From the sequence record KJ019152.1: a stretch of DNA of 64,000 nt; one strand, given 5' to 3'. The notes beneath the pieces are model-generated. The model did not search any database and had not been told where the DNA came from. It saw only the letters and a program-made list of their open reading frames with translations. This document shows, piece by piece, positions 47,686 to 57,440 of this stretch (the first letter of the stretch is position 1; each line of letters begins with the position of its first letter). The translations under genes and the position numbers were made by a program.

Positions 47686-49413
47686 ATGTTGTTGTTTAAG
47701 AAACTAAGATGGCAGAACTTCCTATCCACTGGAGACAAGGGTATTGAAGTTGATTTCCTAATGAACAATACCAATCTTATCATTGGTAGTAATGGTGCTG
47801 GTAAGAGTACCCTTTTGGATGCTCTTACCTTTGTTCTATTCAATAAGCCATTCAGGAAGATCACCAAACCTCAACTAGTTAATAGTATCACTGAGAAGAG
47901 GTGTGTAGTTGAGATTGAGTTTGAAACAAACAATAAGAGTTACTTGGTTCGCCGTGGAATCAAACCTAATGTATTTGATATCGTAGTAGATGGGAAACTA
48001 TTAGACAAGCGTGGTGATGACAGGGATAACCAGAAACTATTAGAAGAGAATATTCTTAAGGTTAATTATAAATCATTCACTCAGGTAATTATCCTTGGGG
48101 CATCTACCTTCGTCCCCTTTATGCAACTCACTGCCTCCAATCGTAGAGATGTGATTGAGGATCTACTAGACATCCGTGTATTTAGTCAGATGTCAGGTAT
48201 CGTCAAGGATCGTATCAGACAACTCCGTGAAGATATCAAGATTCTAGATCTCAAGAGGGGATCTCTTAGAGATAAGTCTGAGATGCAGAAGAACTTTATC
48301 AATGAGATTACTAAGAAGGGTGAGAGTAATATTGAATCCAAAGGAGAGAAGATCAAGACTCTATTGTTTGAGAAGCAAACTCTAGAAACCGAGAATATCA
48401 CAACTCTAACTAAACTGAAAGAACTTCAGGATGAGTTGGAAGGACTAGAAGACGCTTCTGATAAACTACGTAAGTTGGGTAGTCTAAGGGGTAAGATTTC
48501 CCAGAAGATTACTACACTCACTAAGGAACACAAGTTCTTCAAAGACAATGCTTCCTGTCCTACCTGTACTCAGGATATTGATGAAGAGTTTCGTAGTGTC
48601 AGACTAAGTGAGTTGGGTGACAAAGCAAAGGAGATGAACAAAGGGTTTAAAGAACTAGAAGATACTATTGAACGTGAAGAGAACCGAGAGCAAAAGTTCA
48701 AGAGTATCTCCAAACAAATCCTAGAACTCAACACTCAGGTGAGTACTAACAACACAAAAAACACTAGTATCAGTATGAATATTGGTGATCTTGAGAGTGA
48801 GATTGGATCTATCAGGCACTCCATTGATAACCAAACAGAGGAGAAAGAGAAACTAGATCGTTTCCAAGATGACCTGAGTCGAGTATTTGATACCCTCTCC
48901 ACTAGAAACTCTGAGATGGATAACAATAAGTTTGTCTATGAGTTACTGAAAGATGGTGGAGTGAAGACTAATATCATCCGCAAGTACATCCCCTTCATCA
49001 ACAAACAGGTGAATAGGTATCTCCAGATGATGGAGTTCTATATTAACTTCGAGTTAGATGAAGAGTTTAATGAGACTGTAGTATCACCTATTCATGAGAA
49101 CTTCTCATACTCTTCCTTCTCTGAGGGTGAGAAGATGAGAATTGACTTGGCACTTCTATTCACCTGGAGAGAAGTTGCTAGGGTTAGAAACTCTGTGAAT
49201 ACAAACCTCCTAATTATGGATGAGGTGTTTGATAGTTCTCTAGATGGTTTTGGAACAGAAGAGTTCCTCAAAATCATCAGATATGTTGTACAAGATGCTA
49301 ATGTATTCATTATTAGTCACAAACAAGAACTCCACGAACGTTTCGATAGTGTTCTACGATTTGAAAAGGATAGAGGGTTCTCCAAACTAACTCTAAATAA
49401 AACAAACGATTAA
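47686..49413 (+). CDS. gp46: Recombination ATPase gp46 (Rad50/SbcC-like)
   Basis: Walker A 'GSNGAGKST', zinc hook 'CPTC', signature 'FSEGEKMRIDLAL', 'LIMDEVFDSSLD', 'ISH'. Confidence 0.98.
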   Translation: MLLFKKLRWQNFLSTGDKGIEVDFLMNNTNLIIGSNGAGKSTLLDALTFVLFNKPFRKITKPQLVNSITEKRCVVEIEFETNNKSYLVRRGIKPNVFDIVVDGKLLDKRGDDRDNQKLLEENILKVNYKSFTQVIILGASTFVPFMQLTASNRRDVIEDLLDIRVFSQMSGIVKDRIRQLREDIKILDLKRGSLRDKSEMQKNFINEITKKGESNIESKGEKIKTLLFEKQTLETENITTLTKLKELQDELEGLEDASDKLRKLGSLRGKISQKITTLTKEHKFFKDNASCPTCTQDIDEEFRSVRLSELGDKAKEMNKGFKELEDTIEREENREQKFKSISKQILELNTQVSTNNTKNTSISMNIGDLESEIGSIRHSIDNQTEEKEKLDRFQDDLSRVFDTLSTRNSEMDNNKFVYELLKDGGVKTNIIRKYIPFINKQVNRYLQMMEFYINFELDEEFNETVVSPIHENFSYSSFSEGEKMRIDLALLFTWREVARVRNSVNTNLLIMDEVFDSSLDGFGTEEFLKIIRYVVQDANVFIISHKQELHERFDSVLRFEKDRGFSKLTLNKTND

Positions 49414-54180: not shown

Positions 54181-54211
54181 GAAACCATCTCATCCTTTAT
54201 CTTTTATATTA

Positions 54212-54880
54212 ATGAAACTATCTGACGAAACTATTGCAGTGTTGAAGAACTTCTCTTCTATCAACCAGAGTATTATTGTGGGTGAGGGTAACACCTTAAG
54301 AACTATCTCAGTGATGAAGAACATCCTTGCTGAGGCAAAAGTCTCTGAGAACTTTGAGAAGTCCTTTGCTATCTACGACCTCAATGAGTTTCTAAATGGT
54401 TTATCGCTTCATGACAACTACGCATTGGATTTCTCCAATGACACCTTTGTTGTTATTCGTGAAGGTCGTCGTCGTGTGAACTATCACTTCGCAGACCCTG
54501 AAGTTATTGTTGCTCCACCTGATAAGCAACTCCAACTTCCCTCTGAGGATGTATGTTTCCAACTAGATCACAGCCAACTCTTACAACTAGTGAAGGCTGC
54601 TTCTATCTACAAACTCCCTGATTTATCTGTTGTTGGTGAGAATGGAACTATCTCCCTAGTTGTTCGTGATAAGAAGAACGACTCATCCAATGTGTATTCT
54701 GTGGATGTTGGTGAGACTACCGATGACTTCACCTTCAACTTCAAGGTTGAGAATACTAACAAGATTCTCGCTGGTAACTATGATGTAGTTATCTCCCAGA
54801 AACTACTCGCCAAGTTCACTGGACAGAAGAACAATGTTGAGTATTTTATCGCTTTAGAACCAGACAGCACCTTTGGGTGA
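54212..54880 (+). CDS. gp45: Sliding clamp gp45
   Basis: 'MKLS..T..VLKNFSSINQSI', 'F.IYDLNEFL', 'G.Y.V.IS', 'YFIALEPDS'. Confidence 0.97.
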   Translation: MKLSDETIAVLKNFSSINQSIIVGEGNTLRTISVMKNILAEAKVSENFEKSFAIYDLNEFLNGLSLHDNYALDFSNDTFVVIREGRRRVNYHFADPEVIVAPPDKQLQLPSEDVCFQLDHSQLLQLVKAASIYKLPDLSVVGENGTISLVVRDKKNDSSNVYSVDVGETTDDFTFNFKVENTNKILAGNYDVVISQKLLAKFTGQKNNVEYFIALEPDSTFG

Positions 54881-54915
54881 TATTATGGGAGGGTAACAAC
54901 AACCCCCCAGCAACT

Positions 54916-55032
54916 ATGTGTAATATCGTGTATCTCTCAGGAAATACTTTTTATTACACTAGGTGCTTGGCAAAACAGAATATTCGTGTTATACTGGGTA
55001 GGGATATAGAGTATTGTTTTGTTGGGGAATAA
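54916..55032 (+). CDS. Possible 38-aa ORF
   Basis: MCNIVYLSGNTFYYTRCLAKQNIRVILGRDIEYCFVGE; no clear RBS. Confidence 0.25.
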   Translation: MCNIVYLSGNTFYYTRCLAKQNIRVILGRDIEYCFVGE

Positions 55033-55086
55033 AAGAATACCTAACCTATATCTCCCCTATAATACACAGCAAACCTGTGGCACTAG

Positions 55087-55115
55087 TTGCCGCAGGTGTT
55101 TTTATGCGTTATAAT
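55087..55115 (+). promoter_or_regulatory. Sigma70-like promoter TTGCCG-17-TATAAT for the HNH cassette
   Basis: Canonical spacing; the -35 lies in a 10-bp hairpin (ACCTGTGGCA/TGCCGCAGGT). Confidence 0.7.
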
Positions 55116-55147
55116 AATAATACCCCAATAAAACAATAGGTATTATT

Positions 55148-55306
55148 ATGAGTATGATAAAACAGCGCCTGTATGAGGATACAGAGGCGCCTAGCGCAAC
55201 AGATATGGCAGAGTATGAGTTATACTGCTACTACCAAGATATGGTAGAGAGATACAATACTACCGCCCCAGAGAAGTTTTTAGAAGAGGCGTTTGGTAAT
55301 GAGTAA
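55148..55306 (+). CDS. 52-aa acidic microprotein coupled to the HNH gene (not in ORF track)
   Basis: MSMIKQRLYEDTEAPSATDMAEYELYCYYQDMVERYNTTAPEKFLEEAFGNE; its stop overlaps the HNH start (ATGAGTAA). Confidence 0.6.
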   Translation: MSMIKQRLYEDTEAPSATDMAEYELYCYYQDMVERYNTTAPEKFLEEAFGNE

Positions 55307-55892
55307 TACAACCTGCGCTCAGTGTAGCGGCACCCTAGGCAAACGCCAGAAGAAGTTTTGTTGTGTAACCTGCGCCAACCTATACAACGCAGAGGTTTGG
55401 AAGAAACAACATAAAGAGGAATACCCAGATAGGTATATTGTATGTGATATTTGTGGTGTAGAGAAACCGCAAGCAAGGTTTAGTTTGCTAGATAAAACCA
55501 GAGCAACTGGTTGTGAGAGGCGCACAACCTGCAAACCCTGCTCTAAAAATAGAAGAGAGCGAGAGAGAAGAGATAGAGGTTGGCAGCATGATGCCAGAAA
55601 CATACTCTGGCGGGTGAGTAGGGCGAGAGCGAAACGCTGTGGTATAGAATACACAATAACCAAAGAAGATATTGTTATACCAGAGTATTGCCCTGTGTTT
55701 GGTATGAAACTACACAGAGAAGATAGGGCAACTTGGTATGCCGCCCCAAGTATAGATAGAATAGATAATACAAAGGGTTACATACCTGGCAATATTGTTA
55801 TTGTGAGTAGAAGAGCAAATATACTAAAAAAAGATGCTACAATAGAGGAGTTGGTTTTGTTGGCGGAATATTACAAGCGATATAGGGGGTAG
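55299..55892 (+). CDS. Free-standing HNH-like (beta-beta-alpha-metal) endonuclease with two N-terminal Zn fingers; probable homing endonuclease
   Basis: CxxC...CCxxC and CxxC...CxxC; C-terminal 'CPVFG...PSIDRIDNTKGYIPGNIVIVSRRANILK'; inserted in the normally compact g45-g44 interval. Confidence 0.85.
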   Translation: MSNTTCAQCSGTLGKRQKKFCCVTCANLYNAEVWKKQHKEEYPDRYIVCDICGVEKPQARFSLLDKTRATGCERRTTCKPCSKNRRERERRDRGWQHDARNILWRVSRARAKRCGIEYTITKEDIVIPEYCPVFGMKLHREDRATWYAAPSIDRIDNTKGYIPGNIVIVSRRANILKKDATIEELVLLAEYYKRYRG

Positions 55893-55909
55893 GCACGCTG
55901 GGTTATTAC

Positions 55910-55918
55910 TGGTATAAT
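55910..55918 (+). promoter_or_regulatory. Sigma70-like extended -10 (TGG-TATAAT) in a hairpin loop
   Basis: Upstream of the ATG at 55941; flanked by TTACTG...CAG-GAGTAA. Confidence 0.55.
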
Positions 55919-55940
55919 ACAGGAGTAACCCAAACTCACT

Positions 55941-56468
55941 ATGAATATTTTTGTTACAGAGCACTCACCCTATGCTAGTGCAGTTGTATTACCAGATAAA
56001 TACCAAACAAAAATGCCAGTAGAGGCAGCACAGATGCTCTCTATCATCTACTCTCACTGGTATTACAACTGGGGTAAAATTCACAAGGCAAATGGAGAAC
56101 CATACTCTACTGAGAAGGGTGCGTTTCGCAACCACCCCTGCACCAAGTGGGCAGCAGAGAGTATGTACAACACAGCCTGGTTGATCGCTCATGGTCTAGC
56201 ACTCTGTACTGAATACACTGCTAGGTATGGTAAAGTTCACTCTTGTGCTAAGACCTTGTTTGAAGCCAAGAAGATGTTCCATAGATACACTGGTGAGACC
56301 ATCCTATGTTACAATATGGTGGAGGACTTCACCCGTGCCATGCCTGATGAGTTCAAGCTTGACACTGGTATCTCTACCTTTGATGCGTATAAGATGTATA
56401 TTTCATCCAAACCTTGGGTGAAAGACAACTATCTCCGCAAACCTGAACGCAAACCCTCTTGGGTTTGA
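55941..56468 (+). CDS. Pyrimidine-dimer DNA glycosylase (DenV)-like family protein
   Basis: 'MNIFVT', 'LPD....KMP.E..QML', 'HPCT.W', 'L..HG..LC.EY..RYGK.H.C', 'RAMP', 'AY..Y...K'. Confidence 0.7.
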   Translation: MNIFVTEHSPYASAVVLPDKYQTKMPVEAAQMLSIIYSHWYYNWGKIHKANGEPYSTEKGAFRNHPCTKWAAESMYNTAWLIAHGLALCTEYTARYGKVHSCAKTLFEAKKMFHRYTGETILCYNMVEDFTRAMPDEFKLDTGISTFDAYKMYISSKPWVKDNYLRKPERKPSWV

Positions 56469-56489: not shown

Positions 56490-57440
56490 ATGAACGAACG
56501 CACTGATTTCCTATGGACAGAGAAATACCGCCCACAGGTTATTGATGATTGTATTCTCCCCGATCACGTAAAGAATACATTCAAGGAGTTTGTTGCTAAG
56601 GGTGAGATCCCTAACCTCTTGTTATCTGGTCCTCCTGGTATTGGTAAGACCACAATTGCCAAAGCTCTTTGTAATGAGATTGGTGCCGACTACTATGTAA
56701 TCAATGGATCCGATGAGGGAAGATTCCTTGATACAGTCCGTAACCAAGCAAAGAACTTTGCTTCCACAATGTCCCTTACCTCGGAAGCAAAACACAAGGT
56801 CATCATTATTGATGAGGCAGATAACACAGGTAGTGATGTTCAGATGTTGCTTCGTGCAAACATCGAGGCATTCTACAAGAACTGTCGTTTCATCTTTACC
56901 TGCAACTATAAGAACAAGATCATCGAACCCCTCCACAGTAGGTGTGCAGTGGTTGAGTTCTCCGCTAAGGGTAAGGATAGACAACAGATCGCCGCGTCCT
57001 TCTTCCAGAGACTCTCTGGTATCTTAGAAAAGGAACATGTAGAGGCTGACAAGAAGGTTCTGGTAGAACTAGTTCAGAAACACTTCCCTGACTTCAGGAG
57101 GGTTCTAAATGAGGTTCAGAGGTATTCCAGTAGTGGTAAGATCGACTCTGGTATCCTAGCAACCTTCTCTGAAGTTAAGGTAGAGGACCTTATCAAACAC
57201 CTTCGTGAGAAGAACTTTGTTGAAGTCCGTAAGTGGGTTGTTGCTAACTTAGATAACGATACTAATAGTATCCTCCGTAAGTTATACGACACCCTATCTA
57301 CACAACTAAAAGGTCCTTCTATCGCTGCTGCTGTATTGGTTATCGCCAAGTATCAGTATCAGGGAGCCTTTGTAGCTGACCAGGAGATCAACCTCCTAGC
57401 AGCTCTAACCGAAATTATGATTGAATGTGAGTTTTCCTAA
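56490..57440 (+). CDS. gp44: Clamp loader large subunit gp44
   Basis: 'LW.EKYRP....DCILP', Walker A 'GPPGIGKTT', 'IIIDEAD', 'IIEPLHSRC'. Confidence 0.98.
   Translation: MNERTDFLWTEKYRPQVIDDCILPDHVKNTFKEFVAKGEIPNLLLSGPPGIGKTTIAKALCNEIGADYYVINGSDEGRFLDTVRNQAKNFASTMSLTSEAKHKVIIIDEADNTGSDVQMLLRANIEAFYKNCRFIFTCNYKNKIIEPLHSRCAVVEFSAKGKDRQQIAASFFQRLSGILEKEHVEADKKVLVELVQKHFPDFRRVLNEVQRYSSSGKIDSGILATFSEVKVEDLIKHLREKNFVEVRKWVVANLDNDTNSILRKLYDTLSTQLKGPSIAAAVLVIAKYQYQGAFVADQEINLLAALTEIMIECEFS

What the first reader, a model, noticed from the sequence alone, without database searches (positions are those of the whole stretch)
55055..56040. HNH endonuclease cassette with extreme strand-specific TC depletion and no GAC/GTC
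Seen: I read this ~985-nt stretch line by line and found only 6 TC dinucleotides on the + strand, all as CTC (near 55319, 55542, 55606, 55936, 55965, 56038). ATC, TTC and GTC are absent, while GA occurs several times in most 60-nt lines. GAC is also absent from about 54866 to 56251. Flanking genes use TC and GAC normally. The zone covers the cassette promoter, the 52-aa ORF, the HNH gene and the first ~100 nt of the downstream DenV-like gene. That gene reads 'VTEHSP' where I recall family members having 'VTDP'; Asp-Pro requires GAC-C or GAT-C, both of which contain an avoided word. Inference: selection against a very short motif around the nuclease gene. Options are (a) self-immunity of a short-site nickase acting near its own locus or on a competing phage, (b) scarring by a TC-specific ssDNA deaminase during mobilisation, or (c) co-conversion from a donor genome under such pressure. 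I know of no description of such a motif-free halo around a phage homing endonuclease.
Basis: partly seen in the sequence, partly recalled or inferred. Interest (0 to 1): 0.85.

Follow-up and report, generated by a model that had tools for sequence, protein, structure and literature searches.

The report
TC-free homing-nuclease cassette in a cyanophage
A mobile nuclease gene cassette in a marine Synechococcus phage has had the two-letter word TC almost completely removed from its coding strand. The gap is real, is shared by related cassettes, is kept up by selection, and has no known cause.

Summary
The window is Synechococcus phage ACG-2014f isolate Syn7803C25. Positions 55055-56040 hold 6 TC, all as CTC, against 58.5 +/- 9.6 per 985 nt. 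The stretch without any ATC, TTC or GTC is 993 nt long; the genome-wide mean gap is 21.6 nt and the background maximum about 183 nt. Codon-shuffled controls do not reproduce it (nuclease gene: 3 TC observed, 24.5 +/- 3.5 expected).

The zone lies in a roughly 1.0-kb insertion between gp45 and a Pyr_excise (DenV-like) gene. About 49 sister isolates lack the insertion. It carries two promoters, a 52-aa leader ORF and a zinc-ribbon HNH/EndoVII-like nuclease, followed by a co-converted, diverged 5' end of the DenV-like gene.

Forty-two homologues (33-61% identity) are unbiased. Unrelated nucleases in sister cassettes, their leaders and untranslated regions, and one non-nuclease cassette share the bias, always on the sense strand.

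TC is replaced by TA, CC and GC rather than TT, which argues against deaminase scarring. The bias persisted through about 25% synonymous divergence, so it is actively maintained.

Best reading: nucleotide-level selection on the cassette's transcription unit against a strand-specific TC-reading activity. That agent was not identified.

The parts
54212..54880 (+). gp45 sliding clamp, the left flank. TC and GAC are normal here.
   Evidence: Pfam gp45-slide_C. GenBank annotation. TC 51 observed against 45.4 expected.
54900..55940 (+). Inserted cassette DNA, absent from about 49 sister isolates of ACG-2014f.
   Evidence: Megablast: 1 of 50 records covers the whole query and 44 cover 68% at 95-99% identity. 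The left junction lies after 54899. The same insertion at the same site occurs in two metagenome contigs, L011 and L023.
54900..55002 (+). Left arm of the insert, upstream of the first cassette promoter's start site. It is not TC-depleted.
   Evidence: 5 TC in 103 nt, about what the genome gives. So the depletion does not begin at the insertion boundary.
54967..54995 (+). Promoter-like site P1 (TTGGCA-17-TATACT, with TG extension). It is conserved in all sister cassettes.
   Evidence: Promoter scan. Motif search and alignment across cassettes.
55073..55097 (+). G+C-rich hairpin followed by a T run (terminator- or attenuator-like), overlapping promoter-like site P2 at 55087-55115 (TTGCCG-17-TATAAT).
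   Evidence: Scan. Conserved in the psbA-psbD cassettes and in L011.
55148..55306 (+). 52-aa acidic leader ORF (PHROG family phrog_10005, function unknown). Its stop overlaps the nuclease start by 8 nt.
   Evidence: PHROG E=1e-34. Homologues head cassettes that carry three different nucleases. 0 TC against 5.5 expected.
55299..55892 (+). 197-aa zinc-ribbon HNH/EndoVII-like nuclease, taken to be a free-standing homing endonuclease.
   Evidence: PHROG endonuclease and endonuclease VII families, E about 1e-31. No Pfam or NCBIfam hit. AlphaFold2 pLDDT 89. Foldseek best hits are PacI (E=3.6e-4), Hpy99I and the Gme HNH nickase. TC 3 against 24.5 expected.
55890..55918 (+). Promoter-like site P3 (TAGGCA-17-TATAAT, with TG) supplied by the cassette for the downstream DenV-like gene.
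   Evidence: Scan. A similar element flanks the TC-poor cassette orf52 elsewhere in the genome.
55941..56468 (+). Pyr_excise (DenV-like pyrimidine-dimer glycosylase family) gene. This is the conserved neighbour and probable target of the nuclease.
   Evidence: Pfam PF03013, E=1e-10. The order gp45 | HNH | Pyr_excise | gp44 recurs in many cyanomyovirus contigs.
55941..56093 (+). Donor-type (co-converted) 5' tract of the DenV-like gene. It is diverged from the cassette-free alleles and probably covers the nuclease's target, making this copy immune.
   Evidence: All differences from the empty alleles except a single one (at about 56426, shared with one of the two) fall in 55946-56093; the sequence is otherwise identical beyond that. 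The same tract is present in L011, where ATC ATC is additionally ATA ATA.
55055..56037 (+). Zone depleted of TC on the sense strand.
54864..56251 (.). GAC-free zone. GTC is absent as well, through the TC depletion.
   Evidence: GAC/GTC-free zones of about 1.1 kb also occur in the psbA-psbD and US42 cassettes. They do not occur in the relatives L012 and L013.

Best explanation
**What the region is.** It is a selfish, mobile nuclease operon: tandem sigma-70-type promoters, a hairpin, a 52-aa leader ORF, and a translationally coupled zinc-ribbon HNH/EndoVII-like nuclease. It has inserted just upstream of the start of the Pyr_excise (DenV-like) gene. It brings its own promoter for that gene and a diverged copy of the gene's first ~150 nt. 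That diverged copy presumably removes the nuclease's target, so the cassette-bearing genome is immune.

**What the TC desert is.** It is a heritable trait of this cassette lineage. Sister cassettes in the same phage population share the trait and the same promoter-and-leader module, although they carry unrelated nucleases.

**How it is maintained (inferred).** Purifying selection at the nucleotide level acts against TC on the sense strand of the operon's transcription unit. ATC, TTC and GTC are hit hardest, TCA and TCG most of all, and CTC is partly tolerated. A separate avoidance of GAC is seen in the ACG-2014f cassettes.

**Most likely purpose (inferred, not shown).** Selection keeps a single-stranded form of the operon free of the target of a short-motif, strand-specific enzyme. 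That form could be the mRNA or the non-template DNA strand exposed during transcription. The nuclease operon would then stay expressed and intact when ordinary phage genes need not. The agent was not identified.
For: **Mobility and architecture.** The cassette is absent in about 49 of 50 sister genomes. It has a sharp left junction and a co-conversion tract to 56093. The same insertion occurs in two independent metagenomes. The pairing of this nuclease with Pyr_excise is conserved across cyanomyoviruses.

**Not explained by codons or amino acids.** Codon-shuffle controls, codon junctions and untranslated leaders all show the depletion. One example is 208 nt of non-coding leader with 0 TC in the psbA-psbD cassette.

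**Follows the sense strand.** A GIY-YIG gene on the minus strand of isolate US42 is GA-poor on the + strand, while its convergent leader ORF is TC-poor on the + strand.

**The unit is the transcription unit, not the inserted DNA.**
- The window's left arm upstream of P1 is normal.
- In the psbA-psbD cassette the insertion spans 47776-49092 of locus L009, but the desert spans only 47876-48953, from the P1 start site to the nuclease stop.

**Selection rather than decay.**
- rho(TC) is 0.25 against 1.08 in the genome, while TT is unchanged and TA, CC and GC are raised.
- Ile is ATA rather than ATT.
- GAT-C became GAG-C. TGT-TCT in outgroups is TGC-TCT in the clade.
- Lineages of the clade differ at 37-43 synonymous codons per pair, yet each keeps 2-5 TC against about 25 expected.

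**Trait of the cassette lineage, not of the enzyme family or of nucleases in general.**
- 42 homologues have rho(TC) 1.06 +/- 0.18.
- Three other nuclease genes in the same genome are normal (0.85-1.27).
Against: - No enzyme that reads TC was found. T4 endonuclease IV, a TCA-preferring single-strand DNA nuclease, has no detectable homologue in any Synechococcus phage. The cleavage signature of cyanobacterial RNase E is A at -3 and U at +2, not TC (PMC8682795).
- Any host-wide or phage-wide activity should also shape the core genome, which is normal. A reason specific to cassettes therefore has to be assumed.
- In the window the desert continues about 145 nt past the nuclease stop into the DenV-like gene. 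In the psbA-psbD cassette and in L012 it stops within about 10-70 nt. The 3' limit does not fit one simple rule.
- A gene behind a similar P1-type promoter (ORF218) is only mildly depleted.
- One TC-poor cassette, orf52, has no recognisable nuclease.
- No transcript data are available. Promoters and start sites are consensus matches only.
Confidence: 0.45

Rival explanations
1. Self-immunity to a short-site nickase, the first reader's option (a). The cassette's own nuclease, or a frequent-cutting phage nickase, nicks at a 2-3-nt word. Purging the word from one strand is enough to prevent double-strand breaks near the gene. The sense strand is the cheaper one to purge, because GA is needed for Glu, Asp and Arg codons.
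For: - The fold is closest to HNH restriction and nicking enzymes.
- Phage HNH enzymes that nick sites of 3-5 bp are known (my own knowledge).
- The desert is local and includes the neighbouring target region.
- GAC and GTC are absent on both strands, as expected for a double-strand site.
Against: - 42 homologues of the enzyme show no bias.
- Three unrelated nucleases, plus a non-nuclease cassette, share the same avoided word.
- The arms of the inserts next to the genes are not purged.
- The rest of the genome is full of the word on both strands. A nickase of that specificity would need a genome-wide protection that would also cover the cassette.
Confidence: 0.13
2. Mutational scar, the first reader's option (b). 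A TC-specific single-strand cytosine deaminase, or UV damage at TC, repeatedly hits the strand exposed during transcription or during homing-associated repair synthesis.
For: - The pattern is strand-coordinated, local and TC-specific, and TCA is the most depleted trinucleotide.
- Several changes in the DenV tract are C to T: TTC to TTT, GTC to GTT, GAC to GAT.
- TC depletion is the known footprint of APOBEC3 enzymes in animal viruses (my own knowledge).
Against: - TT is not enriched; TA, CC and GC are.
- Ile is ATA and ATT is depleted.
- TC is also removed by changing the T, as in GAT-C to GAG-C and ATC to ATA.
- The reading frames are intact and the proteins conserved.
- Serine is kept as AGY, which cannot arise from TCN by C to T.
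- Other strongly transcribed phage genes, such as psbA, are TC-rich.
Confidence: 0.1
3. Passive foreign signature, the first reader's option (c). The cassettes recently came from an unknown replicon whose whole coding strand is TC-poor, and they have not yet taken on the composition of their new genome.
For: - The cassettes are compositional islands with sharp edges.
- Several different genes share the signature.
- The leader ORF and HNH2 are almost confined to this phage population in the databases searched.
Against: - No TC-poor flank or genome was found. The cassette sits among normal flanks in ACG-2014f and in a different phage background, L012.
- Apart from TC and its compensating dinucleotides, the nuclease gene has the same dinucleotide profile as its unbiased homologues.
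- The bias survived about 25% synonymous turnover in three lineages. That requires continuing constraint, not inheritance alone.
Confidence: 0.15
4. Avoidance of double-strand palindromic sites that contain both GA and TC (GATC, GANTC, TCGA and the like). This could be to escape restriction, or to escape the phage's own three adenine methyltransferases. Removing TC from one strand removes all such sites.
For: - The genome encodes three DNA adenine methylases.
- The desert contains no GATC. The first GATC is at 56183.
Against: - Only a handful of such sites per kb would need removing (a rough estimate of mine, not computed), whereas about 55 TC per kb have been removed.
- The core genome does not avoid these words.
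- No reason specific to cassettes is apparent.
Confidence: 0.05
5. Chance, or a by-product of amino-acid composition and codon usage.
For: The nuclease is rich in Arg, Lys and Glu. That lowers the expected TC from about 35 to 24.5 per 594 nt (the figure of 35 is my scaling's window mean).
Against: - Codon-shuffle z is about -6, and none of 3000 shuffles reaches the observed count.
- Non-coding leaders and codon junctions are depleted too.
- The 993-nt gap compares with a 21.6-nt mean.
Confidence: 0.01

Closest known systems
Free-standing homing endonucleases of T4-type phages (T4 seg and mob genes; F-CphI next to psbA in cyanophage S-PM2)
   Same: - A nuclease gene with its own promoter, inserted between or at the start of conserved genes.
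- Present or absent among near-identical genomes.
- A co-conversion tract in the neighbouring gene, whose diverged sequence presumably gives immunity.
   Different: - No cleavage was tested here.
- The cassette also carries a conserved 52-aa leader ORF and tandem promoters that are shared with cassettes bearing unrelated nucleases.
- It re-encodes the 5' end of the target gene.
- To my knowledge no such element has been reported to lack a dinucleotide. Two full-text searches found nothing.
Promoter-early stem-loop (PeSL) mobile regulatory cassettes of T4-type phages (Arbiol, Comeau and Krisch 2010; cited from memory)
   Same: Hairpin-plus-early-promoter modules flank variable ORFs and recur at several loci.
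   Different: PeSLs were described as recombination modules. No compositional trait of the enclosed genes is part of that description. Membership was not tested against the published motif.
TC-depletion footprint of APOBEC3 cytosine deaminases in animal DNA viruses
   Same: Under-representation of TC, especially TCA, as an evolutionary footprint of a single-strand-specific enzyme that reads TC.
   Different: - Here the footprint covers 1 kb of a mobile element, not a whole genome.
- It is far more extreme (rho 0.14-0.27).
- There is no excess of TT.
- No deaminase is known in this system.
T4 endonuclease IV (DenB), a dC-specific single-strand DNA endonuclease that prefers dT-dC-dA (PMC1635256, PMC2095790)
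   Same: It shows that a T4-type phage can encode a single-strand-specific nuclease whose target is essentially TC(A). TCA is the most depleted trinucleotide here.
   Different: - No DenB homologue occurs in any Synechococcus phage record.
- T4 protects itself with hydroxymethyl-cytosine. Nothing of that sort is known for this phage.
Motif-free mRNAs that resist sequence-specific endoribonuclease toxins (ACA-less transcripts and MazF)
   Same: The logic is the same: a transcript that lacks a very short word survives an RNase that destroys other mRNAs.
   Different: - No RNase specific for UC is known.
- The analogy is inference only.
- The GAC/GTC avoidance on both strands looks like a feature of DNA rather than of RNA.

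Membership tests
HNH / beta-beta-alpha-Me nucleases (EndoVII-like) | beta-beta-alpha-metal fold | tested here: met
   AlphaFold2 model with pLDDT 89. Foldseek best PDB hits are PacI (E=3.6e-4, probability 1.0), Hpy99I and the Gme HNH nickase, though TM-scores are low at 0.2-0.44. PHROG endonuclease and endonuclease VII profiles, E about 1e-31.
HNH / beta-beta-alpha-Me nucleases (EndoVII-like) | Catalytic His at the end of the first strand, plus Asn or His metal ligands | tested here: inconclusive
   The invariant residues are D153-R154, N165 and N174. From my own knowledge, the usual Asp-His pair here reads Asp-Arg in all 34 aligned members. No residue-level superposition was done and no curated Pfam or NCBIfam model matches.
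HNH / beta-beta-alpha-Me nucleases (EndoVII-like) | Zinc-binding Cys4 modules, as in zinc-ribbon HNH enzymes | tested here: met
   C49, C52 and C78 are invariant and C81 nearly so. An N-terminal CxxC...CxxC is visible in the sequence. There are weak rubredoxin and zinc-finger matches.
Free-standing homing endonuclease gene | Presence/absence polymorphism at one site among near-identical genomes, with co-conversion of flanking markers | tested here: met
Free-standing homing endonuclease gene | The enzyme cleaves the cassette-free allele near the insertion site and not its own allele | not testable with these tools
   Needs protein expression and cleavage mapping.
Deaminase (APOBEC-like) mutational footprint | The lost TC reappears as TT, that is, C to T on the affected strand | tested here: not met
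   rho(TT) is 1.03 times the genome value, while TA is 1.45, CC 1.44 and GC 1.71 times. Against unbiased homologues, TA rises from 0.72 to 1.18 and TT does not rise. ATA, not ATT, replaces ATC.
Restriction-site (palindrome) avoidance | The avoided words are double-strand sites, equally rare on both strands | tested here: not met
   TC is depleted while its complement GA is not (73 GA against 6 TC; GA 51 observed against 50.6 expected). Only GAC/GTC behaves symmetrically.
Enzyme-specific self-immunity (the gene avoids its own product's site) | The bias tracks the enzyme family | tested here: not met
   42 homologues are unbiased. Unrelated nucleases and a non-nuclease cassette are biased.

The most novel reading that the evidence does not exclude
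Marine Synechococcus infections by these myoviruses involve an undescribed activity that is specific for single strands and reads TC. It could be an endoribonuclease, a nuclease acting on non-template-strand DNA, or a modifying enzyme, encoded by either phage or host. A family of selfish homing cassettes has become invisible to it by purging the dinucleotide from its whole transcription unit. This would be the first case of dinucleotide-level stealth by a mobile element inside a phage genome, and a sequence signature by which such conflicts could be found elsewhere.
Probability: 0.3. Interest if true: 0.9.

Novelty: new variant of a known kind. Interest (0 to 1): 0.75.

Why it matters
Short-motif avoidance is one of the few ways to read past molecular conflicts directly from sequence. 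Here the avoided word is only two bases long. It is strand-specific and confined to mobile nuclease operons, while the surrounding phage genome is normal.

If selection is the cause, some activity in the infected cell discriminates TC on a single strand. That activity matters to the selfish element but not to the phage. This is a level of conflict, element against phage or host, that has not been described for homing endonucleases.

The work also gives a simple, testable signature: sense-strand gaps in ATC, TTC and GTC of several hundred nucleotides or more. That signature could be used to scan other phage genomes.

The architecture is of interest in itself. A shared promoter-and-leader platform carries interchangeable nucleases and re-encodes the 5' end of the target gene, which here is either DenV-like or psbD.

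Tried and rejected
- **Amino-acid or codon composition.** Rejected by codon-shuffle controls and by the depleted non-coding leaders and codon junctions.
- **A general property of the HNH family.** Rejected: 42 IMG/VR homologues and 9 further orthologues at the same locus are unbiased.
- **A general property of homing-nuclease genes.** Rejected: a GIY-YIG gene, a LAGLIDADG-like gene and another endonuclease gene in the same genome are normal, as are nuclease genes in other cyanophage contigs.
- **A consequence of the P1-type promoter.** Weakened: ORF218, behind a similar promoter, is only mildly depleted. L012 lacks the leader and promoter but keeps the desert.
- **Selection for unstructured mRNA.** Rejected: the real genes fold as stably as synonymous recodings, or more so (z -1.4 and -6.1).
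- **Avoidance of RNase E.** The published cyanobacterial signature is A at -3 and U at +2, not TC.
- **A T4 endonuclease IV homologue as the agent.** No hit in any Synechococcus phage.
- **A known structured RNA in the leader.** No Rfam match.
- **Finding more cassettes through the leader ORF.** Only 1 IMG/VR locus and 2 JGI loci were found.
- **Prior description in the literature.** Nothing was found.
- **Rho-dependent termination through YC dimers.** Set aside without testing, because cyanobacteria lack Rho (my own knowledge) and CC is not depleted.
- **DarT-type TNTC targets.** Set aside, because the depletion does not depend on the base two positions upstream.
Full report
**Identity and context.**
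The window is part of Synechococcus phage ACG-2014f isolate Syn7803C25 (KJ019152.1, Kyanoviridae), a T4-type cyanomyovirus. Window position 54200 corresponds to record position 116200. The finding lies between the gp45 sliding clamp (54212-54880) and the gp44 clamp loader (56490-57440).

GA occurs 73 times. GAC is absent from 54864 to 56251.
- Windows of 985 nt average 58.5 TC (sd 9.6). The lowest value elsewhere in the window is 36.
- I fetched the rest of the genome. The gap free of ATC, TTC and GTC is 993 nt, against a mean gap of 21.6 nt. The next three gaps (352, 278, 208 nt) all lie in one other place, and no other gap exceeds 183 nt.
- Resampling synonymous codons from the genome's own usage gives 24.5 +/- 3.5 TC for the nuclease gene (3 observed) and 5.5 for the small ORF (0 observed). 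It gives 3.8 non-CTC TC for the first 99 nt of the DenV-like gene (0 observed, P about 0.004). gp45, gp44 and the rest of the DenV-like gene are normal.
- The avoidance is independent of reading frame. Only 1 of 59 T-ending codons is followed by a C-starting codon. Ser is AGY, Ile is ATA or ATT, and Asp is always GAT, although other C-ending codons (AAC, TAC, CAC, ACC, GCC) are used freely.

**What the DNA is.**
- Forty-four sister isolates match the flanks at 95-99% identity but lack about 1.0 kb.
- Alignment with two of them puts the left junction after 54899, 19 nt past the gp45 stop. It shows that homology resumes at the start codon of the next gene.
- The insert carries these parts:
  - a promoter-like site P1 (54967-54995);
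  - a G+C-rich hairpin with a T run (55073-55097) overlapping a second promoter-like site P2 (55087-55115);
  - a 52-aa acidic ORF (55148-55306, PHROG family phrog_10005, function unknown);
  - a 197-aa ORF (55299-55892) overlapping it by 8 nt;
  - a third promoter-like site P3 (55890-55918) in front of the downstream gene.
- The 197-aa protein matches no Pfam or NCBIfam model. It matches PHROG 'endonuclease' and 'endonuclease VII' profiles at E about 1e-31.
- An AlphaFold2 model built from 34 homologues (pLDDT 89) is most similar to the HNH restriction enzymes PacI and Hpy99I and to an HNH nickase.
- Two Cys4 clusters are conserved. The position of the usual catalytic Asp-His reads Asp-Arg in the whole family, so catalysis is inferred rather than shown.
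- The downstream gene (55941-56468) belongs to the pyrimidine-dimer glycosylase family.
- All but one of its differences from the cassette-free alleles fall between 55946 and 56093; the exception, at about 56426, is shared with one of the two empty alleles. They include Asp7 (GAT) to Glu (GAG). Beyond 56093 the sequences are otherwise identical. This is the pattern of a co-conversion tract next to a homing endonuclease gene. The tract probably covers the enzyme's target.
- The same insertion, with the same tract, is present in two metagenome contigs from independent samples.
- The gene order gp45 | this nuclease | Pyr_excise | gp44 is widespread in cyanomyovirus contigs.

**The bias is not a property of the enzyme.**
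- Homologous nuclease genes at the same locus in other cyanomyoviruses (51-61% identity) have 15-24 TC, which is what their amino-acid sequences predict.
- Forty-two IMG/VR homologues (33-61% identity) have rho(TC) = f(TC)/(f(T)f(C)) of 1.06 +/- 0.18, with a minimum of 0.67.
- Only the close clade is depleted (77-89% identity: the window, L011, L023, L012 and L013/L014). It has 2-6 TC, and rho(TC) is 0.14 for the window's gene, 0.29 for L012 and 0.19 pooled over the window, L012 and L013.
- A distant cassette that also has a leader-like ORF (L024) is not depleted.

**The bias is shared by other cassettes.**
- The upstream module (P1, hairpin, P2, leader ORF; 70-87% protein identity between leaders) heads two other cassettes in sister isolates:
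  - One lies between psbA and psbD and carries a different HNH-type protein (210 aa, phrog_12376). It is also present in this genome.
  - One lies after gp32 in isolate US42 and carries a GIY-YIG/NUMOD3 nuclease on the opposite strand.
- Both are TC-poor and free of GAC and GTC over about 1.1 kb.
- In US42 the leader ORF is TC-poor on the + strand. The convergent nuclease gene is GA-poor on the + strand, which means TC-poor on its own sense strand.
- Per-gene rho(TC) in this genome:

| Gene or segment | rho(TC) |
|---|---|
| Nuclease in the window | 0.14 |
| Both leader ORFs | 0 |
| The two untranslated leaders | 0.22-0.25 |
| Second HNH (HNH2) | 0.27 |
| US42 GIY-YIG gene | 0.49 |
| orf52 (125 aa, no recognisable function; present in about half of the isolates; flanked by hairpin-promoter modules) | 0.25 |
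| Other nuclease genes (a GIY-YIG, a LAGLIDADG-like 'cox1-i7' and a 'putative endonuclease') | 0.85-1.27 |
| 160 ORFs of 100 aa or more | 1.09 +/- 0.19 |

**Extent of the desert.**
- In the window the first 103 nt of the insert, upstream of the P1 start site, have normal TC (5 TC).
- Comparison with a cassette-free isolate shows that the psbA-psbD cassette occupies 47776-49092 of locus L009. It sits inside the 5' end of psbD, leaves a 43-nt remnant of the native start, and supplies a new promoter and a new start. Its desert runs only from 47876 to 48953, from just after P1 to the nuclease stop.
- In L012 the nuclease has no leader and is fused to the first five codons of the DenV-like gene. 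There the desert equals the nuclease ORF plus about 70 nt.
- So the depleted unit is the nuclease operon's transcription unit rather than all co-transferred DNA.
- The extension into the DenV-like gene is specific to the window's cassette lineage. In L011 it is longer still, because ATC ATC there is ATA ATA.

**Mutation or selection.**
- Normalised for base composition, the cassettes differ from the genome in TC (0.25 against 1.08), and in raised TA, CC and GC. TT is unchanged.
- Against unbiased homologues of the same gene, the changes are TC 1.12 to 0.19, TA 0.72 to 1.18, and AC and GT slightly up. TT is not up.
- Ile shifted to ATA rather than ATT.
- TC is sometimes removed by changing the T: GAT-C to GAG-C, and ATC to ATA.
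- A conserved Cys-Ser pair reads TGT-TCT in outgroups and TGC-TCT in the clade. This turns TTC into the tolerated CTC.
- Three lineages of the clade differ from each other at 37-43 synonymous codons and about 45 residues, yet each has 2-5 TC where about 25 are expected.
- These facts fit continuing selection against the word. They fit poorly with a C-to-T deamination scar or with a signature merely inherited from a donor.
- The most avoided trinucleotides are TCA (6 against 61 expected), TTC, ATC, GAC, GTC and TCG.
- GAC avoidance is separate, because L012 and L013 keep GAC.

**Mechanism.**
- An activity that reads TC on one strand only is needed. The complement GA is not avoided even where synonymous choice would allow it.
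- The coincidence with the sense strand and with the transcription unit points to the mRNA, or to the non-template strand exposed by transcription.
- I could not name the agent:
  - The one phage enzyme known to target TC(A) on single-stranded DNA is T4 endonuclease IV (PMC1635256, PMC2095790). It has no homologue in Synechococcus phages.
  - Cyanobacterial RNase E has a different signature.
  - The genes are not less structured than recoded controls.
- Why only these cassettes are affected also remains open. A general host or phage activity would be expected to shape the core genome too.
- One possible answer is conflict. The element would gain by escaping a control that the phage tolerates or uses, such as shut-off of early mRNAs. 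This is inference only.
It does not explain why unrelated nucleases share the word.

**Verdict.**
The object is a new member of a known kind, a free-standing HNH homing-nuclease cassette. It carries an unusual trait that two full-text searches did not find described: a sense-strand dinucleotide desert maintained by selection and shared by a family of cassettes. The cause is unresolved.

Noticed in passing
L009 47733-49100 (KJ019152.1 172733-174100), outside the window: The psbA-psbD cassette is inserted inside the 5' end of psbD. A 43-nt remnant of the native psbD start remains on its left. The cassette supplies a new promoter-like site and a re-encoded psbD N-terminus (MTASLAPPKSNGGW instead of MTTSTLTTPQRGW).
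   Followed up: partly
L012 65-740 (Logan SRR19888796 contig): In another phage background the same nuclease clade has no leader or promoter. It is fused in frame to the first five codons of the DenV-like gene (MNIFV). A second copy of that start, behind a P3-like promoter, follows the nuclease. This looks like the primary insertion event.
   Followed up: partly
L008 36306-36872 (KJ019152.1 36306-36872): orf52 (125 aa, no family match) is TC-poor (5 TC against 19 expected). It is flanked by hairpin-promoter modules resembling the one after the nuclease gene in the window, and it is present in only about half of the isolates.
   Followed up: partly
window 55299-55892, residues 151-187: The C-terminal nuclease motif also matches the PHROG family named after T4 Srd (E=5e-8). 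From memory, that protein is reported to stimulate RNase E. Some database homologues are annotated as 'Srd anti-sigma factor'.
   Followed up: no
window 55792-55765 and 55748-55724, minus strand: A promoter-like site and a terminator-like hairpin lie on the antisense strand inside the nuclease gene. An antisense promoter-like site also sits in the leader of the psbA-psbD cassette (L009 48079-48051). From memory, an antisense RNA over a homing-endonuclease gene is known in cyanophage S-PM2.
   Followed up: no
whole genome KJ019152.1: The core genome is strongly depleted in the dinucleotide GC (rho 0.61) and in CG (rho 0.49). The nuclease gene family is not depleted in GC. The genome encodes three DNA adenine methylases and its own sigma-70-family protein.
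   Followed up: no
L025 4497-5207, minus strand (KJ019152.1 54497-55207): A gene annotated 'cox1-i7 protein', presumably a LAGLIDADG-type intron endonuclease relative, lies on the minus strand in a + strand genome. Its TC content is normal.
   Followed up: partly
L008 7530-8324 (M23 peptidase gene): A second stretch low in TC (12 in about 800 nt). GAC is normal there, and the depletion against the codon-shuffle expectation is only mild (ratio 0.77). It is probably mostly an effect of amino-acid composition.
   Followed up: partly
L009 32215-32663: A near-copy of the cassette promoter P1 (GTGTTATACTGGGTAGGTATT) precedes a 98-aa ORF that is only mildly TC-poor.
   Followed up: partly
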